A DNA stretch of 63,885 bases, filler included, from Guillardia theta CCMP2712 (taxonomy: Eukaryota; Protista; Cryptophyta), in NCBI RefSeq assembly GCF_000315625.1. It is 6 parts of 6 records of this genome, joined end to end, with 100 filler letters (N's around TTAATTAATTAA, not from the genome) between each part and the next. Parts side by side here need not be neighbours in the genome. Positions count along the whole stretch, not along the records: positions 28,296 to 57,952 come from NW_005434417.1; 5 more parts are not named here. One strand, given 5' to 3'. The number at the start of each line of letters is the position of its first letter. The first letter of the stretch is position 1. This document shows positions 28,296 to 54,074 of the stretch, in pieces. The notes under the pieces were generated by a model. That model saw nothing but the letters and a program-made list of their open reading frames with translations, searched no databases and had not been told where the DNA came from. The translations under genes and the position numbers were made by a program.

Positions 28296-31200
28296 ATCCA
28301 TCACATTTCGTCGGACACTGGCAGATCGGCATGCCATGGAGATAGCAGTCGAGCATCTGAGCATAGCGGTGCGGGAAGGCCTTGAGGGGGTAGTAGCTCG
28401 AGACTCGCATCGGAGAGGGGCTCAGGTCACGCTCAGGAAAATGAGCGAAGATGGTAGACTGCAAGACCCTATCCTGCGACTTGAGCGAGACATAGGATTT
28501 ACTGGCAGAAGGTAAAAAGTGCCTCAAGCAAAACAAAGCAGGAACAAGCTGAACCTCCAGGCACACAGTCCACAGCGAGAAGCTGCACAATCACACACAA
28601 AACACAAGCCCGAAAAGAACCAGCACTGCTGCCACCCAGACGCGGCAGCGCCAGCCCAAGCGCGAAGCCGCGCAGACAAGCAGCCTAAGGGTCAAGCAAT
28701 CAAGCAACAAGCAGCAGGAGCATGCAGGGAGGAATAAAAATCCCTTACACGCGATACCCGGAGGCAGCCGACTGACCACTGTCAGTCGAGACGTCCGCTG
28801 CCGCCACAAAGCGGGGGCGGCCGCCTCCAGCGTCAGCTGCATGGGTGAGGCGCTGATAGGTGGCGGCGCGTTTGCGAGCCAAGACCTCAGCAGCAGGGCC
28901 GTCATCAGGCACGAAGTGCCGACCAAACGCCGCATCCTCAAGAGGCATTGAGCGCTGAGCAANNNNNNNNNNNNNNNNNNNNNNNNNNNNNNNNNNNNNN
29001 NNNNNNNNNNNNNNNNNNNNNNNNNNNNNNNNNNNNNNNNNNNNNNNNNNNNNNNNNNNNNNNNNNNNNNNNNNNNNNNNNNNNNNNNNNNNNNNNNNNN
29101 NNNNNNNNNNNNNNNNNNNNNNNNNNNNNNNNNNNNNNNNNNNNNNNNNNNNNNNNNNNNNNNNNNNNNNNNNNNNNNNNNNNNNNNNNNNNNNNNNNNN
29201 NNNNNNNNNNNNNNNNNNNNNNNNNNNNNNNNNNNNNNNNNNNNNNNNNNNNNNNNNNNNNNNNNNNNNNNNNNNNNNNNNNNNNNNNNNNNNNNNNNNN
29301 NNNNNNNNNNNNNNNNNNNNNNNNNNNNNNNNNNNNNNNNNNNNNNNNNNNNNNNNNNAGTGGATTTACTGGCAGAAGGTAAAAAGTGCCTCAAGCAAAA
29401 CAAAGCAGGAACAAGCTGAACCTCCAGGCACACAGTCCACAGCGAGAAGCTGCACAAGCACACACAAAACACAAGCCCGAAAAGAACCAGCACTGCTGCC
29501 ACCCAGACGCGGCAGCGCCAGCCCAAGCGCGAAGCCGCGCAGACAAGCAGCCTAAGGGTCAAGCAATCAAGCAACAAGCAGCAGGAGCATGCAGGAGGAA
29601 TAAAATCCCTTACACGCGATACCCGGAGGCAGCCGACTGACCACTGTCAGTCGAGACGTCCGCTGCCGCCACAAAGCGGGCGGCCGCCTCCAGCGTCAGC
29701 TGCATGGTGAGGCGCTGATAGGTGGCGGCGCGTTTGCGAGCCAAGACCTCAGCAGCAGGGCCGTCATCAGGCACGAAGTGCCGACCAAACGCCGCATCCT
29801 CAAGAGGCATTGAGCGCTGAGCAATGATGTCCGCCAGATACCAGATGAAGCGGAGGGTGTCAGGATGCAGGGTACCGTCCGTCGAGATGGCAAGAGGGAT
29901 GAACGCTCGAGGAGGAGTAGTCATGGCATATGCAGCGCGATGTTTGCGAATGCGTCGAGGTTGACCTCCCCCCACTTGGTCAGGTCGGCAGAGCTACCAA
30001 TGTAAGGGTGGACCAACGTCACGTCCGCCATCAAGCCCTCGTACTGCTCGGACCCTCGATCGCGGATTCCAGGAATGCCAGTGGACCCGATAATGGATTT
30101 ACTGGCAGCCTCAAGCAAAACAAAGCAGGAACAAGCTAAACCTCCTGGCACACAGCGCACAGCGAGGAGCGGCACAATCACACACAAAACACAAGCCCGA
30201 AAAAAACCAGCACTGCTGGCACCCAGACGCGGCACCGCCAGCCCAAGCGCGAAGCCGTGGATATCGCCCTTCATCTGGCGGCCATGAGGATGGGAGGGTA
30301 CCTGCCGTCGAGAACGAGGATCCCCCACTGTATCGATGACGCTCTGAAGACCAGCTTCGTTCAGCATCGACCGAATCGTACGAGTAAGGTTGTCATGCGC
30401 CGTGGGAAGCTTGGAGGATCGGCGTTTGCAGGTCTGGAGATGATGTGCAGCAACGGAGGGATCGAGCTCGCGCTGACATCCATCACATTTCGTCGGACAC
30501 TGGCAGATCGGCATGCCATGGAGATAGCAGTCGAGCATCTGAGCATAGCGGTGCGGGAAGGCCTTGAGGGGGTAGTAGCTCGAGACTCGCATCGGAGAGT
30601 GGCTCAGGTCTCGCTCAGGAAAATGAGCTAAGATGGTAGACTGCAAGACCCTATCCTGCGACTTGAGCGAGTGTGTCCTGCGGCTGTGCAAGGTGAGGAT
30701 ATCACGCTGCTGATCGGTCAGCGCAGCGCGAGCATGCACATGGCGAGGGAAGACGCGCATGACAAGAGGGGTCACATTTCGCTGCGCAGGGGGAGGAATG
30801 AAGTGCTCATGAGACGAGTCGACGAGAGCGCGCAAACCAGGGATGTGTACCACTGATGCCGGGGGGCGTCCTGCGTCATCAGGCACAGCAGCCGGGGCAG
30901 GTGGGATCGCCGCGCCATCTGCAGCCGGACGGTGCAGGAGCCTTGACACGACGGTAGAGGATCGCTCCAGCATTATGAACGAAGTCGTGCGCCTCAACGA
31001 AGAAGGTCGCCAGAGGATGCTTCTGGGCACGGAGAGATCTCGAGCAGTGAACGTCCAGGCTATGAGGAGAGGGCAGCGTCCGGGACATCGGCTGGTCAGA
31101 GTACCAAGCGAGGAAGCGAGCGATAGCCGTATAGTAAACAGCGGGGTGTAGACCCTCAGAGGCGTCCCCTCCCCGACTATGCGGAAGCTCCCGCTTGAAC

Positions 31201-33090
31201 CTCGCAAACTCGAGCAGGTCGGGATGCGCGGCGAGGTACTGCGAGGAAGGCCAGCGGTGGTATTTCTCAAGCGCCAGGTGGACAGAGAGGTCAAAGCGAC
31301 GAATCTGTGACTGGACCCGCGGGAGAAACGGAGATGACCCCTGGAGGAAGAAGCGCAGCTTCTGGAGATGGCTCGCCCTCACCAGCGTCTTGAACATGAA
31401 GCCATGCTGGACGAGCCCGAGCTTCGAGAGCTCTTCGTTGAGGGTAGAAACCTTCGCTCGGAGCTGACTAGCATGAAATCCATCCGTGCCGATAGGCAGG
31501 CCGCCAAGTGTAATCCCGCCAGTGACGACCTCGAAGTGAAGAAGTTGAGTCTTGAGACGGCGCTTAAGGCTCTTCTTCAGCTGCGAGAGATCAGGGTGTT
31601 GATGCCAGGAGGGGATGTAAACTTTCGACTCGCGAGGTTGAATCTCTAGCTTCAGATCAGCCAACATGTACTTCTTCATAGCGGACGTAGCTGCAACGGC
31701 ATCCTCGAGTGGACCGACAAGCACGACGTTGTCAGCATAGGCCAAGACTCGAACAGAGGGAAAAAGATCTGCGATATGGAGGAGCAGGGGGTGGATACTG
31801 TGGCAGAAAAATACGCTGGAGGGGACATCGCCCTGACAGACGCCCGAGGTACACTGAACGGAGGCTGACTGACTTTTGTGAAAGAGTCGAAGGTCAGCAG
31901 AGTCTCCATAGTAGCTGGAGAGGTAGGAGGCGAACAAACGGAGATGCTCGCAAGAGGGCAAGCTTGCGCCTTCAGTGATGCTCCCATTAGTGCTATCAAA
32001 GTAGTCGCGACTCGCACGTCCCTCGATTGCATCGAAGAGAGCCTGGCGGTCGAGGGAGTTGAAGGCGTTCTTTGCATCCAAACTCACCAGCACTGTGGAG
32101 TATAGGATTTACTGGCAGAAGGTAAAAAGTGCCTCAAGCAAACAAAGCAGGAACAAGCTGAACCTCCTACGGAGAAAGGGCAGCCGCCGACAAGAGAGGA
32201 GCCGGCGTTGCCCGGGGGTCCGCCGGGGGCAGCGGACGGTGGCACCCACTGTGGGGTTGGCAACATCCTCATCATCACCGCTGAAGGGGCAGGAGCGCTG
32301 ACGCGGTTTGCGAGAACTTCAGACAGCCGTCTCGATCGAGTCCGAACTGAATCGCTCGAGGGTGAGACGAGAGGAAGTGCTGGTCAAGAAATGAGCGAAT
32401 CGCTGCCGAGGCAATGCCCAAGGACCGTCGTGACCCGACCGATGCCGGGGAGGAAGCAGGCGAGCTCGGACCAGCAGCAAGCACCCCAGTGGTGTCGAGC
32501 TCTCCGGAGGCACCCGACGTCACAGTGAGGGACGGAGACGCCTCGCCAGCTCCGCGCCGGTCGTCGGGGCCACTCGAAGGGTGTCCCCCATCGGAGTCGG
32601 AGACCTCCGGCGAAGACTCCTCGGGCGACTCGACAAAGTCCGAGGAGGAGCTGTCCTCTGGCTCGAGAAGTGCTTGCGCCCGCAAGGGCGTCATGCGCCT
32701 CGCACCAGACAGGAGCGCCTCCAGCGTCAGCTGCATGGTGAGGCGCTGATAGGTGGCGGCGCGTTTGCGAGCCAAGACCTCAGCAGCAGGGCCGTCATCA
32801 GGCACGAAGTGCCGACCAAACGCCGCATCCTCAAGAGGCATCGATGGATGCTGTGGCAGAAGAGTACGCTGCCACGGTTGTACGGATTTACTGGCAGAAG
32901 GTAAAAAGTGCCTCAAGCAAAACAAAGCGTTTAGCTTGTTCCTGCTTTAAATCCGTACTACCAGCGTACTCTTCTGCCACAGCATCCATCGACTCTACGC
33001 TGGAGGGAAAGAGTTTTACAGCGGCTGACTGATCCTTGTGGCAGTGAAAGAGTCGAAGGTCAGCAGAGTCTCAGCAGTAGCCCTTGAGGG
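28296..33090 (-). mobile_element. Cluster of 5'-truncated, rearranged CRE-like non-LTR retrotransposon copies (RT plus restriction-like endonuclease)
   Basis: RT motifs LDAKNAFNSLDR, SGVCQGDVPSSVFF, LAYADN and LGGLPIG. CCHC knuckle CDGC..HHLQTC, AHDNL, KGDI..MADVTLVHP and FIPLAISTDG. The element 3' terminus recurs at 28495, 29362, 30095, 32105, 32884 and inverted at 32954. Confidence 0.9.
29610..32093 (-). pseudogene. Disrupted RT-ZnF-endonuclease ORF of the largest retroelement copy
   Basis: Starts abruptly just before LDAKNAF, so the upstream RT motifs are missing. Split over three frames (30879-32093, 29921-31294, 29610-29975) and carries a 165-nt insertion. Confidence 0.85.
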
Positions 33091-33100
33091 AGGAGGGGGG

Positions 33101-33261
33101 GCTTAACTCGGTCAGCTTAACTCCTTGAGCTTAACTCGGTCAGCTTAACTCCTTGAGCTTAACTCGGTCAGCTTAACTCGTTGAGCTTAACTCGGTCAGC
33201 TTAACTCGTTGTGCTTAACTCGGTCAGCTTAACTCGTTGAGCTTAACTCGTTGAGCTTAGC
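33101..33261. repeat. 14-bp tandem array with 28-bp higher-order alternation (11 units)
   Basis: gcttaactcggtca alternating with gcttaactc(c/g)ttga. Confidence 0.95.
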
Positions 33262-33273
33262 TTTAATGGCTGC

Positions 33274-35661
33274 TCATTGAGCATCAAGATTTGCCGACGC
33301 GTGCGGGTGTCGCTTGTGCAGACCAGAAGAGACCTGAGGGCCCGTGAGCGATGGAGCAGCTCCTTCCATCAGCCTCACCGCGTCCGCGTCATCCGCTTGA
33401 CTGACAGTCTCAGCAGCTCCGCCAGCTGTGAGCAAGAGTGTTGAGAGGAGGCAGGGAAGCAAAGGGATCCTCACCTGACTGCTCCACAAGTTCGCTGCAG
33501 AGGTTGAGCAGGTCGCGGATCTCTCGTTGTCGTCCCTCCATAAACTTCAGCATGTGCTGCATCTTCAGCTTTCTGACAGGCGTGACCTCCGCCGTGCCCG
33601 CGCTCGACGGCTTGCGAGCCTCGTAAGTCTGAACGATGCTTGAGATGTGATTGCACTGCGAGCTGACCATGGGAAGCAGAACTTGCTGCAGCCGCAGCTT
33701 CAGCATGGTCAACTTGTTCGCTCTCTCTGCCTCTGCCATGTCACTCGCTGCAACGAGCGCGTCGATCTCGCTGGCCGTCACTTCCATCTGCTCTTCGAGA
33801 CAACGCTTAACAGGCTCGAGGGCAGAGATCTCTGGGGCCAGGAGGGAGGACACGAGCCCTTCGCTGGCAGCAGACGCTGACGGGCCCGTGGGCTGCTGCT
33901 AACACGTCAAGAGGTCTCAAGGCAGTCAAAGAGCTCACGCTTCCACTCGAGAGCTGCCCGGCCAGCAGGGACGGAAACGAAGTTGCGGGAGCCACGCCGG
34001 GGAGTCCGAAGAGTTGAGGGGGGAGGGGGGGCAGTGACGGAGGCGTGAAGGGTGAGGGAAACGAGAAGCCGGTGCCATGGCTGCGACAAGTCAAAAGATT
34101 GAGGGAGTGAGAGCGACAAAGAGATGAAATTTCATCGCCGCACCTCGTTTGCGGAGTTCTCAGCAAATCCACACCCACGGCTCGAGCGTGAGCAGCAGCT
34201 GCCGCCGAAGCTGCTGCTGCTGCTGCTGCCGCCGCCGCTTGTGGAGTTTGTGGAGAGTGAAAGGAGGACACATGAGGTTCAGTAAGGTTTCGACGCGCAA
34301 GGGAGCTCTCGGCAGCGTTAGAAGCATCGCGAGGTTCGGGCTGATGCGGATCAACGGCAGACGGGAGGTTCGAAGGTCGCACCTCCTCTCGGCTAAACGA
34401 GTTGGCGACTTGCCTGGCAGGACTGGGTGGGCGAGGCCTCTGGTACCATCAGAGTCAGCAGCGCCTCCTCTCTGACTCTCTCACCTGCTCTTGTCGCTGG
34501 TTCTGCACCTCTCGCTCGCCTGCTGCTTCTTCGGCTTGTGCTGGCACTGGCTGGGCGTTGTCAATCTCAACTTGCATACGACACGTCGGGCACTGGCTGT
34601 GCTCCTCCAACCAGGATCTCAGGCAATCGAAGTGGAAGATGTGACCGCAGGGCAACTTCTTGGCGTGAGGGGGCTGCATCTCTTCTCTGCAGATGATGCA
34701 AGTGTGATCCATCCTAGAGAGCTCTTCTGCCGTGGCGTTGGGGAACCTCGTGTTCATGTTGACAATCACTCTTCGATAGCGAATGAAATCAGCAATCCGC
34801 TTCTTAAAGTTCCCAAACGTGTTGTAGAGGTCCCTGACAATGTGTAGTGGAATTCCGTAAAAGGACAAGACGATTGAGAAGAAGATCAGATACACGAAGA
34901 GCTGAAAGAGGTCACTGATGAGATTCAAATAGAAGCTGTAAACTGCCTTGTTCGACCACCTTCCATGTCGTCTCATGTCAATGACATAGAGCATGTACTT
35001 CAAGAAGGTCGTTGTGATCGTGCTCGCGAGTATCACGTATTCGAATGCAAATAGAATCAGGAAGGAAGGGCCTTCCAAGAGAAGGGTTTTAGCTTGCCAA
35101 ACAAAGAAGAAACAATCAGTAGTGAACAAGATTCCCATCAGCATCAAAATTCGGATGTGAGTCAAAGTAGAGACCGCAAGCTCCGTATGGAAATGCTCCA
35201 CGCGGAATTGTGACAGCCAATGAAAGACTTTGACAAACAAGAGAACTGTGAACAGAAAGACAAAGCGAAACTTCAACTCCTCTCGGAATATGGTGAGAGC
35301 CAGACAAGTCTCGGTGACGGCAAACCAAATCTTCTCGTAGAGGCGAAGCTCTTCAGTTGGTCGCAAAGAACCGAGAAAGATCTGTAACCAAACACACTCA
35401 GCGACACCAACAGACTTCTCCTTGTGCACCTTGCGCACAAATTGCGCGAAGATTAAGGCAGCCACGAAGACCATGTTTCCCATCACCGTCACGCAGAGCT
35501 TGTTCGTCCCAAGATGAACAACGATGGGATAAAATTGCTTTCGCACCTAAAGAAACTTTCAAACATTGGAAGCACACAAAAGATTTCACCTGCACTGCAT
35601 GCGTAATGCATGCAACAGTGGCTAGAATGGAAAAGAGACAGTATGTGCGCACGCTGATCAT
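33274..35661 (-). CDS. HRD1: HRD1/synoviolin ERAD RING-H2 E3 ubiquitin ligase (multi-exon)
   Basis: KQFYPIVVHL, WFAVTETCLALTIFREE, LFAFEY, YGIPLHIVRDLY and RING CIICREEM..KKLPCGHIFHFDCLRSWLEEHSQCPTCR. Confidence 0.95.
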
Positions 35662-36101: not shown

Positions 36102-37043
36102 TCTTCTCTCTCAGTCTTCCATCATCTATTCACTTGTCTTCTCTCTCAGTCTTCTATCATCTCTTCTCTTCTCTCTCAGTCTTCTAGCATCTCTTCTCTT
36201 CTCTCTCAGTCTTCCATCATCTCTTCTCTTCTCTCTCAGTCTTCTATCATCTCTTCTCTTCTCTCTCAGTCTTCTATCATCTCTTCTCTTCTCTCTCAGT
36301 CTTCTATCATCTCTTCTCTTCTCTCTCAGTCTTCTATCATCTCTTCTCTTCTCGCTCAGTCTTCTATCATCTCTTCTCTTCTCGCTCAGTCTTCTATCAT
36401 CTCTTCTCTTCTCTCTCAGTCTTCTATCATCTCTTCTCTTCTCTCTCAGTCTTCTATCATCTCTTCTCTTCTCTCTCAGTCTTCTATCATCTCTTCTCTT
36501 CTCTCTCAGTCTTCTATCATCTCTTCTCTTCTCTCTCAGTCTTCTATCATCTCTTCTCTTCTCTCTCAGTCTTCTATCATCTCTTCTCTTCTCGCTCAGT
36601 CTTCTATCATCTCTTCTCTTCTCTCTCAGTCTTCTATCATCTCATCTCTTCTCTCTCAGTCTTCTATCATCTCTTCTCTTCTCTCTCAGTCTTCCATCAT
36701 CTCATCTCTTCTCTCTCAGTCTTCTATCATCTCATCTCTTCTCGCTCAGTCTTCTATCATCTCTTCTCTTCTCTCTCAGTCTTCTATCATCTCTTCTCTT
36801 CTCTCTCAGTCTTCTATCATCTCTTCTCTTCTCTCTCAGTCTTCCATCATCTCTTCTCTTCTCTCTCAGTCTTCCATCATCTCATCTCTTCTCTCTCAGT
36901 CTTCTATCATCTCTTCTCTTCTCTCTCAGTCTTCTATCATCTCATCTCTTCTCTCTCAGTCTTCTATCATCTCTTCTCTTCTCTCTCAGTCTTCTATCAT
37001 CTCATCTCTTCTCTCTCAGTCTTCTATCATCTCTTCTCTTCTT
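36102..37043. repeat. 30-bp minisatellite, about 31 copies
   Basis: Unit cttctatcatctcttctcttctctctcagt, with a few recurrent single-base variants. Confidence 0.97.
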
Positions 37044-45628: not shown

Positions 45629-48469
45629 TCACTCTCTGAAGTATCTACTCACCACCGGCTGAGCCTGCTGCCTCATCCCCAGCACTAGTCGTGAATTGAG
45701 TCGCTCCAGCAGGCCTCCAACGATCTGCAGCGCGAACTGTCGCATACCCGGAGCGATCTGAGGGAGGAGAGAAGCGATCTCCGAGGGGTCTAACCCAGAA
45801 CTCGCTAGCCCCTCCAGCAGCGACCCTCCTCCTCCTCCTCCTCCTCTCGGAGCCCCGAGAAACGTGAGAAGCTTGTCTGCGTTGGAGATGAGCTTCTCAT
45901 CTTGCTCGCTGAGAGGAGGGAGGAGCGAGCGGAATATCGGAGGAGGAGGCGGAAGGAGAGGGTTGCGGTCTAGGGAGAGTCGCTGCAGCAGCTGGAGGGC
46001 GGCGCCTCGGGACATGGCGTCAACTGAGTTGACAGTCTCGTCGAGGATGAACTGACGGAGAAAAGAGCCGCTGTCACTGAAGAAGAACACCAGCGCCTCC
46101 TGCACTCCCGACTTCTTCCCTTTCCTCCCTCCTCCACTGCTCCCCTCCTGCTGGGCCGGCGGCAACATGCTCGCGCTCCTCCGCCTCACACGCGATCGAG
46201 CGCCAGCGACTGGGGTGAGAGCAGGGGAGCGAAGCAGCAGCGGTGGTTCTCCTCCCCTCTCTCCCTCCTCCTTCCTCCCTGCGGTACCCGAGTCGCGCAC
46301 GTCGACGAAGGTCTGGAAGGCCTGGAGGAGCTCGATGAGGCGGTCGACGTCGAAGCTCGAGCCCTTGCCATACACCATGTACCGCAGGGCACTGCGGAGG
46401 CGAGGAGCGTCGTCGGTGAGGAGGCGCTTGGAGAGGTAGGGGAAGGCCTCGTCGATGAGCGCAAACTGCGGGTTGCCGACGAGCGCGATGCCCTCGAGGA
46501 CGCCGATGGCGCGGATGACGAGGGCGAAGTAGGGAGGGATCTTGAAGGGAAACTTGAAGGTGATCTGCGCCAGGTCCCCCGCCAGCTCGTTGAAGTTGAT
46601 GCCTCGCGCCCCTCCCCCGCAAGGGCCTGGTCGAAGACGTTCTTGAGGGCCGGGAGAAGGTCCTTCTTGAGCTCCTCCACGTCAGTCTCGGGGGGGATAA
46701 AGTCGAGGGACACGAAGTCTTGAATGATCTCCTCATAGTCGCGATTCAGTAAATGAGCGATCGCCTCGATCATCCCATACTTCTGATCGTCCGTTACCTG
46801 TCACCTCCTCCTCAGTATCCTCTTCCTCCCTCCCTCCCCCTTCCCTGCTCTTCACCGACCTGCGTCATCAGCCCGAAGTCGAGGATCGCCAGCTTCCCCT
46901 CGGGTGTCCTCAGCATGTTCCCAGGGTGTGGGTCCGCGTGGAAGAAGCCGCTTTCGAGCAGCTGGAGCAGCGTCAACGTCAGAGGCACCAGCAGACGAGG
47001 GGCGAGGGGAGAGGGGAAGGGGGGAGGGACCTGCGTGAGGTAGGCGATCATGCCAACAGCCACCAGCTCCTCCACGTCGTCAGACTCGCTCTGGCTGAGC
47101 TTCACGCCTTCAATCCACTCGGCCACGTGGACTCGACGGGTCGTGAACTCCGGGTAGACGCGGGGAACGACAACCTGCGAGATATTCTGCATGATCTCTT
47201 GGAAGTACTCCCCGTTCTTGCACTCCAGCACGTAGTCCAGCTCCCCGTAAAACCTGCAACACTCTCAGCTCTCCTCCTCCAGTTCCTCTTCCCCTCCCCC
47301 TCCCCCCCGGTGGTGCTTTACCTCGGTGCGAACTCATCGAGGAGCGCGAGGAAGTCGGTTCTGCCGAGCTTGAGGCTGTCAGCGAGCTGCGCGGCTTCAC
47401 GCATGAGGTAGAGGTCGAGCGACACTGTCTCCAGCACAAACGGTCTCTGCACCTTCACCGCCACCGTCGCGCCATCCTTCCTCAACACGCCGCGGTAGAC
47501 CTGCCCAAGGGAGGCGGCGGCGATAGGCTGCGGGGAGAGCTCGGAGAAGACGTCGGTGACCCTCACCCCCAGCTCGCTCTCCATTGTCCTCATCGCCAAG
47601 TCGTTGTCAAACGCGGGGACCTTGTCGCAGAGACGCTGCAGCTCGTACATGGCTTGAGGGGAAAGGATGTCAGGCCTGATCGCCAGCGCCTGTCCCAACT
47701 TGATGAAGAAAGGCCCGAGGGAAGTCAGGATCTCTCGTAGCTTCCTCGTCCTTATCACGTCGTTCTTCTCGATGTTGCCCGTGATGGCGTCGAGGACCAG
47801 AGGCAAGAAGAAGCCCGACGCTGCTGTCATCACCTGCACCAGACGTGCCAACACGATGCCGGGTCGCTTGCGGTAGTAGTCCTGCCAAGACGTCAGCAGC
47901 ATCACTAGCATACACGTCAGCAGCATCACTAGCATACACGTCAGCAGCATCACTAGCATACACGTCAGCAGCATCACTAGCATACACGTCAGCAGCATCA
48001 CTAGCATACACGTCAGCAGCATCACTAGCATACACGTCAGCAGCATCACTAGCATAGGCGTGACCTTGAGGAGGTCAGGCTCGTAGGTCAGCGGCAGTTC
48101 GTTGCCGCTGTCGAACTGGACGACCTGAATGGTCTGACCCTCTTGCGCGAAGTCATCCTGGTTCAGCGACGTTCCTCGCATGCCCTCCATCAGGATTCTC
48201 ACGCGCTCGTCCTGCTCCATCTGCTTCCTCGCGTCTGCCGCCTGCATCTCAAGTCAGCCCTTCCTCTTCCTCCTCCTCGTCAGATGATCCACCGCATTCG
48301 ACAAGGACCGCACTGACGTCCGGGGGGGAGACTGAACCATGAGAAGGGAGCTTCTTGCCGCCCTCGACCTCTGCGAGGGGAGGGAGGGGCGCCATCCGAA
48401 AGAGCCAGAGAAGGAGAAGACGAGCTCCAGTGGAAGAGCCAAGGAGATAAGCTTCAGCGCTGCACGCAT
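45629..48469 (-). CDS. ABC1/UbiB atypical kinase with a bipartite plastid-targeting leader (multi-exon)
   Basis: LGPFFIKLGQALAIRPD, PIAAASLGQVY, VAVKVQRP, FFHADPHPGN, LDFGLM and PFKIPPYFALVIRA. The N-terminus is a signal peptide followed by F and an S/R-rich transit-like peptide. Confidence 0.93.
47890..48056. repeat. 24-bp tandem repeat x7 within an ABC1 kinase intron (47882-48064)
   Basis: Unit acgtcagcagcatcactagcatac. Confidence 0.95.
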
Positions 48470-48758: not shown

Positions 48759-49107
48759 TGCTCTGCTGTTCGACAACAATCTTGTTTACAGTAGTTCTTG
48801 CTCTGCTGTTCGACAACAATCTTGTTTACAGTAGTTCTTGCTCTGCTGTTCGACAACAATCTTGTTTACAGTAGTTCTTGCTCTGCTGTTCGACAACAAT
48901 CTTGTTTACAGTAGTTCTTGCTCTGCTGTTCGACAACAATCTTGTTTACAGTAGTTCTTGCTCTGCTGTTCGACAACAATCTTGTTTACAGTAGTTCTTG
49001 CTCTGCTGTTCGACAACAATCTTGTTTACAGTAGTTCTTGCTCTGCTGTTCGACAACAATCTTGTTTACAGTAGTTCTTGCTCTGCTGTTCGACAACAAT
49101 CTTGTTT
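48759..49107. repeat. 40-bp perfect minisatellite, about 8.7 copies
   Basis: Unit tgctctgctgttcgacaacaatcttgtttacagtagttct, with no spacers. Confidence 0.97.
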
Positions 49108-50547: not shown

Positions 50548-53500
50548 ATGTTCACAGATGTCACAGCAGTGTCAGAGATGTTCTCATTTGACAACTGCTC
50601 ACGAGCTGTATGGTTGCGTGACAGTAAACAAGTCTGGGTTGAGGGGGAAGTACTTGGGTCGGGGTCAGCAGGGAGGCTTCGATGCCGTACGAGCGAGGGA
50701 GAGGTGAGGGAGGTGGAGGCAGACCATGTCGCCCTCAAGAACCCGCGAGCTGAGCAGACCATGGCCGACCTGACGTCCCTGACTCAACTTGACGAGCCAA
50801 ACGTGCTCTTCAACCTTCAGTCTCGCTTCCTCGAGCTCTGCATCTACACCTGGACCGGCCCGATCCTCCTCGCCGTCAACCCCTGGCACACGATCGAGGG
50901 CCTCTACAGCAGAGCAAGCATGGCAAGCTTCATTCGCGACCGCCAGCGGCGCCTCTCTCCCCACGTCTACTCGGTTGCTCATCGCGCGTACGAGAGCCTG
51001 TCGAGCACGCAGAGAAGTCAGTCTATCCTGGTGAGCGGCGAGAGCGGATCAGGGAAGACAGAGACGACGAAGCATCTCCTGCAGTACCTCGCTGCTTCCA
51101 GCTCTCACTCTTCCTCCCCCCCCCCCGGCGAGCATGAGCTCTCCTTGCAGCATATGAGCATGGAGCAGCAGGTCCTACTGACTAACCCCATCCTCGAAGC
51201 CTTCGGCAACGCCAAGACTGTGAGAAACGGTGCTGGAGGCGTGCGATGAGGAACGAGACTGACGTAGGTGCAGACAACTCCTCGCGATTCGGGAAGCTGT
51301 TGATCCTTCAGTTCCAAGAAGAGGTGGAGCAGGCAAGCGATGCGAGGAGGATGCGAATGTGTGGAGCAAAGATAGAGACTTACCTGCTGGAGAAGTCGAG
51401 GGTGGTGCGACAGGGAGGGGGGGAGAGCAACTACCACATCTTCGAGGCTCTCAGAGACAGCTTGCTTGCTCGCTCCCCTGCCTCCTCCTCTCGCTTGCCT
51501 CCTCTGCCCCCCGAGATTCAGTTGGGTCTCGGCGTTCAAGACTTTCGCATCCTCGGCTCGTCGTCTTCGGCTCATCCTGTAGTTTCGCCGCCATGTCGCT
51601 TGCTGGAGGTGTACGAGGCACTCGCGTCCATCGGAGTCAGCGACCAGCAGTGGCTCGACCTCACCCGCGTCCTCCTCGCGCTCCTTCACCTCGGAAACTG
51701 CGACTTCATGGCTGACACCTCCAGCAGCAGCACCAGCGACGTTGACACTGCCCGTCTGCGTTCCAGCAGTGATGTGGAAGTGGCGGCGAGGCTGCTGGGG
51801 TGCGAGGAGGAGGAGCTGGTGAAGGGGCTGCTTGAGCGGCGAGTCAAGACGGTGGAGGAGAGCGTAACGATCTGCAACAGCCGAGAGAAGGCGGAGACAG
51901 CACGCGACTCGCTGATGAAAGCTCTTTACGGCCTCCTCTTCCACTGGATCGTCTCCAGAGTCAACGACTCCCTCGCCACGCCCACAGGACGCGAACTCAG
52001 AAGCTGCAGCAGCGGCTCCAGCAGCGGCTCCAGCAGCGGTCGGAGGGATGGCTCAAGGTCGGTGAGCATTGGGGTGCTTGACATCTTCGGCTTCGAGTTG
52101 TTGGAGAGGAACGGCTTCGAGCAGCTCTGCATCAACTATGCCAATGAAAAGCTTCAGCTGCAGGTGTGTTCGAGCTCCTGCAAGCTCTTCTCCTCCATCC
52201 TGCCCTGCCCTGTCCTAACCTCTGCTCTGCTCTGCTCTGCTCTCTGGTGTGCTCGAACTCCTGGCACTCGGCCTGACGCTGCTTGGTAGTTCAACGAATT
52301 TGTGTTCAAGGAGGAACAGGAGGAGTACCGCAGGGAAGGCATCCCCTGGGAACTGGTCAGCTACAAGGACAACCAGCCATGCATCGACCTGATCGAGGGC
52401 AGAGGTCTCTAGGCTCCTTCCCCCTCGCCTCTGACCGTGAGAGCAGGAGGACTTCTGGCGCTGCTCGACGAAGAGTGTCGCGTGCCTCGAGGAAGCGACG
52501 ACGGGTTCGTGTCCAAGGCTCGGGGGATGCAGCAGGAGCATCTCAAGGCGCCAAAGAGAGAGCGGGAAGCGTTTGCTATCCTCCATTACGCTGGAGAAGT
52601 CTGCTACAGCAGCCGAGGGTTTGTCGACACCAACAGGGACCTCGTCTCGCAGGACTTGCTCGCCCTCCTTGGCTCCTCTCGCTGTTCGCTGCTCTCCCAC
52701 ATGATGCAGGTGGACAAGCGGGCAGGAAGGAGCAGCATGCCTGGCAGGCGGAGAGAAGCGAGGCAGGAGACGATTGCCTCTGAGTTCAAGCAGCAGCTCA
52801 CTTGCTTGACGGCATCCCTCGTCGAGACCGACCGGCACTACGTGCGATGCCTCAACTCCAACGCCCTCAAGCTCCCCCACAAGTTCGACAAGCCGCTAGT
52901 GGCGCATCAGCTGCGTTGCAACGGAGTGGTGGAGGCTGTGCGGGTGGTGCGGGCTGGTTTCACGGGGAGGTACGGGAGGAAAGAGTTCGAGTCTGCCTTC
53001 GCCTCGCTCGCCGGGAGGAGGAGAGGAGGGGAGGCGAGCACGAACGAGGCCATCTCCGACGTTCTGAGGTGAGCGCGTGCCTGCTCCTCTGCTCCTGACC
53101 TCAGCGCGTGCAGGCTTGCGGGGTTGAGGAGGGGCGAGGACTACGAGATCGGAGCATCCAAGGTGTTCCTGCGGGAGGGGAGGATCCACAAGGTGCAGGA
53201 GCTGCTCGCAAGCTTGTATCAAACTTCCGTCTGCTCCTTGCAAGCACGAGCCCTCGCCTGCCTCGCGCGCAGGCAGCTGAGCATGCGGCGACTGAGCTGC
53301 GTCAAGATCCAGCGATGGCACCGGGCGATGAGGGCGAGGAGAGACACCTGCCTGCTGGTGCTCGGCCACGTGCGCAGGCTTCAATCCGCCATGCGCATGC
53401 GCAGGCGTCGCTCGTTCCTGTTGGAGAGGAGACAGGCAGTCTTGTCCATGCAGCGATGGTGGAGGAGGAGCTTGCAGCACGCTCTCGCTCGCTCCCTCGC

Positions 53501-54074
53501 ACTCGCCCGTCGGCCACGGCTTTCAAGGCTTGGGAACGCGTTTGTGGATGCGATGCTGGAGGAGCTTGAGGAGAAGAGAAGAAGCGTCGAGCAGCTCGAG
53601 AGCCTCACGGCCTCCCTCCTCCAGCAGCTGCAGGACTGCGACACGGAGCTGCAGCGCAGTCGGATGGAGAGACTGAAAGAGGAGGCCAAGTACGCCTGCG
53701 CGATAGAGGAGCTCGAAGGAAAGGTCTTCGCACAGAGCCAGCGGGCTGAGGAGGCTGAGGAGCTGGTGCTGCAAGCCAAGACATCCATCCATCGCATCCG
53801 GGAGGAGCGAGACGAGCTGCGGCAGCGATGCTCTCTGCTTTCCGCTGACTGCGAGGAGATGAGGGAGGAGATGAAGAGGATGGAGAAGGCAAGGCAGAGG
53901 CTGCAGCAGGAGAGCGACTTCCGACAGACGCGTGTGCTGGAGCTGTTGAACCATCGGAACCTGCTCAACGGCTCCAGCAAATCTCGAGTAGTCATCAAGA
54001 AGTCTCCTCCTCAATGGAAGTGGAACCGACTGCAGGAGCGAGAGCGAGCGAGCAAGCCTACGCTGAGCGGATAA
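50548..54074 (+). CDS. Myosin heavy chain (SH3-like N-terminus, motor, IQ motifs, short coiled-coil tail)
   Basis: [81 protein letters not shown] and [12 protein letters not shown]. Confidence 0.95.

What the first reader, a model, noticed from the sequence alone, without database searches (positions are those of the whole stretch)
28296..32930. Head-to-tail retroelement chain with the signature of serial template jumping
Seen: on the minus strand the same terminus ..GGCACTTTTTACCTTCTGCCAGTAAATCC, with no poly(A) or simple-repeat tail, ends units at 28495, 29362, 32105 and 32884. A deleted variant ends at 30095. The three readable junctions (28495, 32105, 32884) continue through a few extra bases (TATGT, TATAC.., GTACAACCGTGG) straight into an internal position of the same element: the pre-zinc-knuckle region, the LDAKNAF RT motif, or the RT QGD region. 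Overlapping copies differ by substitutions (28296-28489 vs 30478-30670), so they come from different templates. Known: R2-type RTs add non-templated bases at the end of a template and jump to the 3' end of another RNA, giving exactly [3' end][extra nt][5'-truncated unit]. Inference: this CRE-like family either concatenates several RNAs in one insertion or targets its own copies. I know of no description of this in this lineage.
Basis: partly seen in the sequence, partly recalled or inferred. Interest (0 to 1): 0.75.

Follow-up and report, generated by a model that had tools for sequence, protein, structure and literature searches.

The report
Nested R2-like retrotransposon copies in Guillardia
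This stretch is a pile-up of broken copies of an R2-like jumping gene of the alga Guillardia theta that inserted one into another by ordinary cut-and-copy insertion, not a chain stitched from several RNAs in one event.

Summary
The terminus ..CTGCCAGTAAATCC occurs five times on the minus strand, with no A-tail, and each readable junction runs through a short filler into element-internal sequence.

The headline mechanism does not hold where it can be tested. Intact relatives from the same genome (Guillardia theta CCMP2712) give the normal protein order.
- The termini at 32105 and 30095 belong to short 5'-truncated 3'-end fragments of about 150 and 160 nt. Both sit inside one continuous host copy.
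- Removing them restores ..DEDVANPTV|LVSLDAKNAF.. and ..KGDIH|IPGIRDRG.. exactly.
- The 32105 insert is flanked by an 8-bp duplication (CCACAGTG). The 32884 insert is flanked by a 7-bp one (CAGCGTA). These are target-site duplications, which indicate sequential target-primed insertion into existing DNA copies.
- The termini at 29362 and 28495 cannot be judged, because of the 396-N gap and the piece edge.

The element is a diverged non-LTR retrotransposon with a restriction-like endonuclease (reverse transcriptase (RT), CCHC knuckle, then the endonuclease). Its closest solved relatives are R2 proteins. Membership of the CRE clade was not tested.

Gene models on other scaffolds show the same kind of composites, so nesting is a habit of this family. 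Whether it reflects active self-targeting or only survival in safe DNA is open. This is a new family of a known kind, of modest interest.

The parts
32996..33096 (-). E, part 1. The oldest layer: a degenerate, 5'-truncated RT fragment (..DSADLRLFH..PSSV) that abuts the 28-nt tandem repeat.
   Evidence: About 80% identical to 31863-31930. tblastn to P0026 residues 281-305, with an in-frame stop.
32872..32995 (-). I3. A short insertion into E made of an inverted copy of the downstream flank, filler and part of the 3' end, then a direct 43-nt 3' end (32926-32884) and the filler GTACAACCGTGG (32883-32872).
   Evidence: Flanked by the 7-bp duplication CAGCGTA at 33002-32996 and 32871-32865. Inverted repeat 32841-32992, 72.5% over 160 nt. 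Removing the insert and one duplicate reads PSSV|LFCHSIH, as in P0026.
32845..32871 (-). E, part 2. The RT continues (SVLFCHSIH) after I3.
   Evidence: The inverted arm keeps 3 more bases of E (CTC) than the direct copy, so E once ran on past 32845.
32410..32844 (-). D1. A fragment of the C-terminal coding region (MPLEDAAF..SRRSLGIA) with no 3' end of its own. It is fused at about 32410 directly to the N-terminal part of the RT of copy H.
   Evidence: 99% identical to 29685-29813. tblastn to P0019 residues 339-496, 92%. The junction reads ..SLGIA|SAAIRSF...
29362..32409 (-). H. The host copy, 5'-truncated. It runs from the N-terminal RT region (AAIRSF..) through the RT, CCHC knuckle, RLE, C-terminus, stop (about 29610) and 3' UTR to the terminus at 29362. 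It is interrupted by I1 and I2. It also carries a frameshift near 30925 and an internal C-terminal deletion (QLTLEA|AARF).
   Evidence: tblastn to P0026 residues 167-869 and P0019 is colinear apart from two inserted blocks. Excising I1 and I2 restores the normal protein. RVT_1 match.
32099..32246 (-). I1. A 5'-truncated, internally deleted 3'-end fragment (a C-terminal piece ..PPSAAPGGPPGNAG.., then the last 64 nt of the 3' UTR, terminus at 32105) plus the filler TATACT. It is inserted into the RT of H between ANPTV and LVSLDAKNAF.
   Evidence: 8-bp target-site duplication CCACAGTG at 32254-32247 and 32098-32091. 32102-32167 is 98.5% identical to 28492-28558. Host continuity shown.
30077..30256 (-). 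I2. A 162-nt 3' UTR fragment (30256-30095, the variant with the 13-nt deletion) plus an 18-nt filler (30094-30077). It is inserted into the endonuclease domain of H exactly between GDIH and IPGIRDRG.
   Evidence: 30108-30257 is 93-94% identical to the 3' UTRs at 28521-28670 and 29388-29537. No host base is lost and no clear duplication is present.
28963..29358 (.). Assembly gap of 396 N. It hides what follows the terminus of H (only ACT, 29361-29359, is visible) and the 5' limit of unit A.
28495..28962 (-). A. A C-terminus plus 3' UTR unit of the same deletion subfamily as the end of H. Its 5' limit is lost in the gap.
   Evidence: 98.7% identical to 29362-29824. It has 5 extra homopolymer bases and 1 substitution.
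28296..28494 (-). The filler TATGT (28494-28490), then F, a further young copy entered at the pre-CCHC region (SLKSQD..CQCPTKCDG) and cut off by the edge of the piece.
   Evidence: 98.5% identical to 30478-30671. tblastn to P0026 residues 700-765.
33101..33259 (.). A 28-nt (2 x 14) tandem repeat directly upstream of the nest. This is context; it is not shown to belong to the element.

Best explanation
Window 28296-33096 (minus strand) is a nest of at least six separate copies of one family of non-LTR retrotransposon of the cryptophyte alga Guillardia theta. The family encodes a single long protein: a reverse transcriptase (RT), a CCHC knuckle and a C-terminal restriction-like endonuclease (RLE). 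This is the R2-type layout.

Shown:
- An old copy (E) was hit by a tiny insertion (I3) and by a long 5'-truncated copy (D1+H).
- H was later hit twice by very short 3'-end fragments (I1 and I2).
- Beyond the gap, another 3'-end unit (A) sits in front of another copy (F).
- I1 and I3 are bracketed by 8-bp and 7-bp target-site duplications. I1 and I2 interrupt an otherwise continuous reading frame.

Inferred: each event was an ordinary target-primed reverse transcription.
1. The endonuclease nicks DNA.
2. The RT starts at the exact RNA 3' end (..AAATCC, no A-tail), after adding or copying a few extra bases. These form the variable fillers of 5-18 nt.
3. The RT usually falls off early, which gives the severe 5' truncation.
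4. The second strand is cut 7-8 bp away.

The apparent 'head-to-tail chain' is what nested insertions in the same orientation look like when read linearly. The reason copies pile into each other is not settled. It could be a real preference for the family's own DNA or chromatin, or better survival of insertions in dead element DNA in a gene-dense genome.
For: Identity of the element:
- All 25 word-search hits to the RT open reading frame are G. theta CCMP2712 proteins at 59-100% identity.
- A profile of 10 diverse relatives hits R2 proteins best in the Protein Data Bank (E 8e-10 and 1e-9). L1 ORF2p scores only 0.12.
- A predicted structure of the C-terminal half has R2 proteins as its top 7 Foldseek matches (E 1e-5 to 1e-2), followed by PD-(D/E)XK nucleases.
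- C, C, H, C, then H, D, D and K are invariant or nearly so.

Nesting:
- Many independent gene models read ..DEDVANPTVLVSLDAKNAF.. and ..KMKGDIHIPGIRDRG.. without interruption.
- In the window these are split by blocks made of 3'-end sequence.
- Cutting the blocks out restores both peptides in frame.
- CCACAGTG lies at 32254-32247 and 32098-32091. CAGCGTA lies at 33002-32996 and 32871-32865. An exact 8-mer at the expected place, allowing fillers of 0-20 nt, has a chance of about 3e-4.
- Another locus shows the same pattern: P0013 reads ..ATFF[3' UTR..RKS]YTPFFVEAHD. That implies AAATCC, then TATAC and one unresolved base, then a repeated CCTTCTTC.
- 8 of 30 gene models, on different contigs, put a late part of the element before an earlier part on the same strand.

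Clustering: no element sequence occurs in the other 24.8 kb of the piece.
Against: - I2 has no recognisable target-site duplication. An exact 'jump out and back' during one cDNA synthesis cannot be formally excluded for it.
- The D1|H joint (C-terminal region fused to the N-terminal RT region) has no terminus and no duplication. It needs a different explanation: an internal template switch or a DNA deletion.
- The junctions at 29362 and 28495 are untestable, because of the gap and the piece edge.
- No DNA of any other copy could be fetched. The 'canonical' order therefore rests on predicted proteins, some of them spliced gene models.
- The assembly in this repeat is of uncertain quality: there is a gap, and there are homopolymer differences beside it.
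Confidence: 0.8

Rival explanations
1. Serial template jumping. During one insertion the RT reached the 5' end of one, possibly broken, RNA, added a few untemplated bases, jumped to the 3' end of another element RNA, and repeated this. The result would be [3' end][extra nt][truncated unit] concatemers.
For: R2 RT does add untemplated nucleotides and does jump between templates in vitro (PMC8857657). Every terminus here is followed by a short non-element filler. The mechanism remains possible for the junction at 28495, whose upstream side is hidden by the gap. Some kind of template switch is one way to explain the D1|H joint.
Against: - At 32105 and 30095 the sequence upstream of the short 3'-end block is the exact continuation of the downstream unit.
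- At 32105 and 32884 the block is flanked by 8-bp and 7-bp duplications of host sequence.
- A jump model would need the enzyme to return to the first template at, or 8 nt behind, the point it left.
- The layers also differ in age: E is about 80% identical to H, while the inserts are 93-99% identical to other copies. That points to separate events.
Confidence: 0.06
2. Assembly artefact. Reads from many near-identical copies were mis-joined, so some or all of the junctions do not exist in the genome. In particular, the units on the two sides of the gap could be one copy placed twice.
For: - The nest contains a 396-N gap flanked by a 468-nt direct repeat.
- The two repeat copies differ mostly by homopolymer-length errors on one side.
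- The piece ends inside a copy.
Against: - Chimeric joins would not create exact 7-8 bp duplications at the right places, nor leave the host frame intact.
- Equivalent composites appear in gene models from many other scaffolds.
- The units on either side of the gap differ by a substitution far from the gap and by their 3' flanks, ACT against TATGT.
Confidence: 0.08
3. DNA-level rearrangement. An original head-to-tail tandem array of full copies was whittled down by unequal recombination, deletions and a fold-back inversion, without new retrotransposition.
For: - The D1|H fusion, the shared internal deletion (QLTLEA|AARF) and the palindromic structure of I3 are the sort of thing recombination or replication errors produce.
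- Gene models elsewhere suggest tandem arrangements, for example P0166 and P0004.
Against: - Deletions in a tandem array cannot place a 150-nt 3'-end block inside an otherwise uninterrupted RT or endonuclease frame, nor flank it with a short duplication.
- The fillers match nothing else in the piece.
Confidence: 0.06

Closest known systems
R2 non-LTR retrotransposons (solved: R2Tg 9DOU/9NL3, R2Pm 9NL2, R2Bm 8GH6)
   Same: - One long protein with an RT, then a CCHC knuckle, then a PD-(D/E)XK restriction-like endonuclease.
- Best sequence-profile match and best fold match.
- A sharp 3' end without an A-tail, and extra bases at the 3' junction.
- 5' truncation.
   Different: - Very distant: a single sequence finds nothing in the PDB.
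- No family other than RVT_1 was found in the full-length relative P0175, and on reading it I saw no N-terminal zinc-finger or Myb motif.
- Insertion sites are varied rather than one rDNA site.
- It makes 7-8 bp duplications.
- Motif C reads (Y/F)ADN, not ADD.
CRE/SLACS/CZAR and NeSL
   Same: The same general RT, CCHC and RLE layout. This comparison rests on my own knowledge; no reference sequences were at hand.
   Different: Those elements sit in spliced-leader genes of trypanosomatids or nematodes. This one is in a cryptophyte and inserts at different positions within its own copies. Clade membership was not tested.
Zepp LINE clusters of Chlorella and Coccomyxa
   Same: A LINE of a unicellular alga that accumulates as clusters of nested copies, with non-random placement (PMC3446292).
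   Different: As far as I know, Zepp is an L1-like, poly(A)-tailed element with an AP-type endonuclease, and has one cluster per chromosome. Here the element is RLE-type and has no tail. Its chromosomal distribution is unknown.
L1 5'-truncated insertions and twin priming
   Same: Severe 5' truncation, short duplications, and an inverted 5' segment next to a direct 3' segment (I3). The L1 side of this comparison is from my own knowledge.
   Different: The inverted arm of I3 also contains the filler and 34 nt of downstream target, which classic twin priming does not predict.

Membership tests
RLE-bearing (R2-type) non-LTR retrotransposon | Reverse transcriptase of the non-LTR type | tested here: met
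   RVT_1 scores 33.3 bits for P0026, above the cut-off of 29.6. The window's own open reading frame scores 25.6 bits, below the cut-off. The family profile hits R2 RTs at E 8e-10 and L1 ORF2p at 0.12.
RLE-bearing (R2-type) non-LTR retrotransposon | CCHC knuckle followed by a PD-(D/E)XK endonuclease, C-terminal to the RT | tested here: met
   Invariant or nearly invariant C196, C199, H211, C215, H226, D270, D290 and K322 in 14 sequences. The top 7 Foldseek matches of the model are R2 proteins, followed by PD-(D/E)XK nucleases. The match is colinear with the R2Tg RLE (sub-threshold second stretch).
RLE-bearing (R2-type) non-LTR retrotransposon | Insertion by target-primed reverse transcription: fixed 3' end, variable 5' truncation, short target alterations | tested here: met
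   Five identical termini. The 5' ends lie at different internal positions. There are 8-bp and 7-bp duplications.
R2 proper | N-terminal zinc-finger/Myb DNA-binding domain and insertion at one 28S rDNA site | tested here: not met
   Pfam finds nothing except RVT_1 in the 1468-aa relative P0175. Insertion sites in the window lie at several different element positions. No full-length protein of this exact family was available.
CRE clade | RT groups with CRE1/CRE2/SLACS/CZAR in a tree; insertion into spliced-leader genes | not tested
The host is a cryptophyte.
Template-jump concatemer | The inner unit is not flanked by a target duplication, and the upstream unit is unrelated in register to the start of the downstream unit | tested here: not met
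   At 32105, 30095 and 32884 the upstream sequence continues the downstream unit. Two of the three have 7-8 bp duplications.
Template-jump concatemer | The same, for the junctions at 29362 and 28495 | not testable with these tools
   The upstream or downstream side is hidden by the 396-N gap or by the piece edge.

The most novel reading that the evidence does not exclude
This cryptophyte RLE family may actively home to its own genomic copies, for example through pairing of its RNA with element DNA or through a chromatin mark. That would build self-made nests at many positions, mostly in the same orientation. It would do so with a reverse transcriptase whose catalytic motif C is (Y/F)ADN rather than ADD throughout a broad, undescribed clade.
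Probability: 0.2. Interest if true: 0.55.

Novelty: new member of a known kind. Interest (0 to 1): 0.3.

Why it matters
It corrects an attractive but wrong reading. The chain is not evidence that template jumping happens in vivo.

It also documents an undescribed, recently active R2-like retrotransposon family in the model cryptophyte Guillardia theta, with three features of interest:
- clear marks of target-primed insertion (a fixed 3' end, fillers and 7-8 bp duplications);
- a strong tendency to nest;
- an unusual (Y/F)ADN catalytic motif.

For annotators: many G. theta 'hypothetical proteins' are spliced chimeras of these nested fragments.

Tried and rejected
- A scan of metagenome contigs for the 22-nt terminus found nothing. 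A scan for relatives of P0026 found nothing confirmed.
- A single-sequence search of the PDB with P0175 gave no hit. Only the family profile reached R2.
- The 3' UTR (251 nt) does not fold better than shuffles (z = -0.23), so there is no support here for a structured 3' recognition element.
- The fillers were searched in the whole piece and match nothing else, so a templated origin within the locus is rejected.
- I first guessed an apicomplexan host from the neighbouring genes and read a paper on apicomplexan mobile elements. The protein search showed the host is Guillardia theta.
- Literature searches for 'Guillardia theta' with 'non-LTR', and for 'YADN', gave nothing relevant.
- I considered an intron to explain the QLTLEA|AARF deletion and rejected it, because there is no GT at the boundary.
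- I considered that E and F are one old copy and rejected it. E is degenerate and about 80% identical to H, while F is 98.5% identical to H.
- A common nick-site motif could not be derived from the five sites available.
Full report
**1. Observation**

The 14-mer CTGCCAGTAAATCC occurs five times in the window. All five are on the minus strand, ending at 28495, 29362, 30095, 32105 and 32884. No shuffle out of 100 reached that number. Four copies share about 45-65 nt of identical upstream sequence. The copy at 30095 lacks 13 nt just before the terminus. None is followed by an A-run or a simple repeat.

Each terminus is followed by a short stretch that matches nothing else in the piece:
- TATGT at 28495
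- TATACT at 32105
- 18 nt at 30095
- GTACAACCGTGG at 32884
- ACT, then N, at 29362

Element-internal sequence follows each filler. One addition: the junction at 30095 is readable too.

**2. The gap**

The only N run in the piece is 28963-29358. The 468 nt before it (29824-29362 on the minus strand) and the 468 nt after it (28962-28495) are direct repeats. They differ by five extra bases, all in homopolymer runs on the 28495-28962 side, and by one substitution. The sequence is not continuous across the gap.

Two readings remain open:
- Two real units of the same subfamily. The substitution and the different 3' flanks favour this.
- One unit placed on both sides by the assembler.

Either way, the 3' flank of terminus 29362 and the 5' limit of the unit ending at 28495 cannot be read.

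**3. Whose element, and what kind**

The RT open reading frame (30879-32093, minus strand) has only a sub-threshold RVT_1 match. A word search returned 25 proteins, all from Guillardia theta CCMP2712, at 59-100% identity. The exhaustive search added these:
- an 871-aa uninterrupted relative (P0026, 94% identical);
- a 1315-aa G. theta gene model (P0166);
- a second G. theta family at 41% identity, with a 1468-aa full-length protein (P0175);
- many environmental relatives at 22-36% identity.

A profile of ten of these finds R2 retrotransposon proteins as the best solved relatives (E 8e-10 and 1e-9). L1 ORF2p scores only 0.12.

In an alignment of 14 members the C-terminal half has an invariant or nearly invariant C-C-H-C knuckle, an H, two D and a K. 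An AlphaFold model of that half has mean pLDDT 60.8 and about 70-93 in the core. Its seven best Foldseek matches are R2 proteins, followed by PD-(D/E)XK nucleases.

The element is therefore a diverged non-LTR retrotransposon of the R2 type, with a restriction-like endonuclease (RLE). I could not place it in the CRE clade or any other named clade, because no reference sequences were available.

Pfam finds nothing except the RT in P0175, and on reading the sequence I saw no N-terminal zinc-finger motif.

**4. The normal order of the protein**

Many independent models agree on the order:
- ..RPIVIGSAHRRLATKLALAAIRSFLDQHF..
- DEDVANPTVLVSLDAKNAF..
- YADN..
- CQCPTxCDGC..HHLQTC..
- HGRKMKGDIHIPGIRDRGSEQYEGLMADVTLVHP..
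- KIRKHRAAYA..FIPLAISTDG..
- IAQRSMPLEDAAF..QLTLEALLSGARR..SRRSLGIAAASPPS..SPSAAARFVAAADV..GYRV, then the stop codon.

**5. Re-reading the window against that order**

tblastn of P0026 and P0019 shows that 32430 down to 29610 is one colinear copy, H. It is interrupted by two blocks.

Block I1 (32246-32099):
- It consists of a piece of the far C-terminus, an internal deletion, the last 64 nt of the 3' UTR, the terminus at 32105, and TATACT.
- It sits between ..ANPTV and LVSLDAKNAF.
- It is flanked by CCACAGTG at 32254-32247 and 32098-32091.

Block I2 (30256-30077):
- It consists of 162 nt of 3' UTR, the terminus at 30095, and an 18-nt filler.
- It sits exactly between ..KGDIH and IPGIRDRG.

Cutting out I1 with one copy of the 8-mer, and I2, restores ..GDDEDVANPTVLVSLDAKNAF.. 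and ..HGRQMKGDIHIPGIRDRGSEQYEG.. in frame. An exact 8-mer at the expected place, allowing fillers of 0-20 nt, has a chance of about 3e-4.

The terminus at 32884 belongs to a third small block, I3 (32995-32872). It lies inside an older, degenerate copy, E, which is about 80% identical to H and contains a stop codon. I3 is flanked by CAGCGTA at 33002-32996 and 32871-32865. Removing it gives PSSV|LFCHSIH, as in P0026.

Three of the five termini are therefore the ends of short 5'-truncated copies that were inserted into pre-existing DNA copies. Two of the three have target-site duplications.

A template-jump concatemer predicts neither the duplication nor that the upstream unit continues the downstream one. 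The layers also differ in divergence: E is about 80% identical to H, I2 is 93-94% identical to other 3' UTRs, and I1, D1 and F are 98-99% identical to other copies. This points to successive events.

**6. What remains unexplained in the locus**

- *The D1|H joint.* Upstream of H lies D1 (32844 to about 32410), a stretch of the C-terminal coding region that is 99% identical to other copies. It is fused to the N-terminal RT region of H with no terminus and no duplication (..SLGIA|SAAIRSF..). This could be an internal, microhomology-type template switch during one reverse transcription. It could also be a deletion between two tandem copies. I cannot tell which.
- *The D1+H insertion into E.* D1+H appears to be inserted into E at ..CATCGA|. 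The inverted arm of I3 preserves three further bases of E (CTC) that the direct copy has lost. The three bases visible after the terminus of H (ACT) fit E resuming as A|CTC. That is very weak evidence.
- *The shape of I3.* I3 is partly palindromic. It holds an inverted copy of the downstream flank (34 nt), the filler and part of the 3' end, followed by the direct 3' end, filler and flank. It resembles twin priming or a fold-back, but the inclusion of target flank in the inverted arm is not standard.
- *I2.* It has no clear duplication.

**7. Is this locus special?**

No. Gene models from other scaffolds show similar composites:
- P0013 reads ..ATFF[3' UTR..RKS]YTPFFVEAHD. This implies the terminus, then TATAC and one unresolved base, then a repeat of CCTTCTTC.
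- P0008 reads ..SKS|YTY.., then RT sequence.
- P0004 reads ..SKS|IVAPIL|MKGDIH.
- P0021 reads LTM[..VNP]IKAMQLT.
- P0025 reads ..VNP|RSMPLEDAAF.

Mapping 30 models on the normal order gave these counts:
- 8 models have a late part before an earlier part on the same strand.
- 5 models have inverted 3' UTR pieces next to coding sequence. Orientation is therefore not strictly uniform across the genome.

These models were retrieved by similarity to the element and are spliced predictions. They show that nesting is common, not how common.

Within the piece, all copies lie in 4.8 kb and none in the other 24.8 kb. That is clustered, but the window was picked for that very reason.

Nested LINE clusters are known in other microalgae, for example Zepp (PMC3446292).

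**8. Mechanism**

Shown:
- A fixed 3' end.
- Variable fillers.
- Variable and often extreme 5' truncation.
- Staggered duplications of 7-8 bp.
- The R2-type enzyme layout.

Inferred: target-primed reverse transcription in which the RT starts at the exact RNA 3' end without needing homology to the target. Untemplated addition would give the fillers. Untemplated addition and homology-independent priming are documented for R2 RT in vitro (PMC8857657).

The recurrence of TATAC after AAATCC at three loci hints that part of the filler may be templated, either by a longer RNA 3' end or by read-through.

Not settled: why copies land in each other.

**9. Verdict**

The template-jumping reading is not supported where it can be tested. 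The best reading is a nest of sequential insertions of an undescribed R2-like family of G. theta.

**10. Limits**

- No genomic DNA of other copies could be obtained.
- For coordinate mapping only, two database proteins were joined inside a script. No sequence was printed or saved as a product.

Noticed in passing
window 31730-31741 (minus strand; YADN in the RT), and alignment A1: Motif C of the RT reads (Y/F)ADN. D and N are invariant in 10 relatives that are only 22-34% identical to each other. The N aligns with the second catalytic Asp of R2Tg 'AFADD'. The family nevertheless looks recently mobile, with copies 98-99% identical and target-site duplications. A search of the paper library for 'YADN' found nothing relevant.
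   Followed up: partly
window 32841-32995: The small insertion I3 is an imperfect palindrome. Its inverted arm contains 34 nt of the downstream target flank, a near-copy of the filler, and part of the 3' end. The direct arm holds the complementary part of the 3' end. It looks like a fold-back or a variant of twin priming. The mechanism is unexplained.
   Followed up: partly
window 33101-33259: A 28-nt (2 x 14 nt) tandem repeat of about 5.7 copies, 96% matching, directly abuts the 5' side of the oldest element fragment. It could be a target or a landmark for the nest, or it could be coincidence.
   Followed up: no
window 28815-28830 and 29678-29693, compared with 32710-32724: Units A and B share an internal deletion of the C-terminal region (QLTLEA|AARF, which removes LLSGARR..SPSA). 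This defines a deletion subfamily that has itself been copied. There is no GT at the boundary, so it is not a spliced intron.
   Followed up: partly
P0027 and P0175 (Guillardia theta and transcript assemblies): G. theta carries a second, related family at 41% identity. It has an intact 1468-aa protein recovered from ENA and Logan assemblies, which suggests it is expressed and possibly active.
   Followed up: no
window 47890-48056, 48759-49107 and 36102-37042: There are perfect or near-perfect minisatellites: 24 nt x 7 (100% matching) inside an ABC1-kinase-like open reading frame, where it encodes LVMLLTCM repeats; 40 nt x 8.7 (100%); and 30 nt x 31 (96%), which is strongly C/T-rich. This is unusually clean for coding or intronic DNA.
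   Followed up: no
window 34455-35546 (minus strand), 47318-48247 (minus strand) and 50548-54074 (plus strand): The neighbouring host genes are an HRD1/synoviolin-type RING E3 ligase (Pfam E 1.5e-83), what by eye is an ABC1-like kinase fragment, and what by eye is a myosin-like gene split by introns. The nest lies in ordinary gene-dense DNA about 1.3 kb from the HRD1 gene.
   Followed up: partly
P0001-P0025 and P0164-P0168: Many G. theta 'hypothetical proteins' are gene-model chimeras that splice together sense and antisense fragments of this element, including translated 3' UTR.
   Followed up: partly
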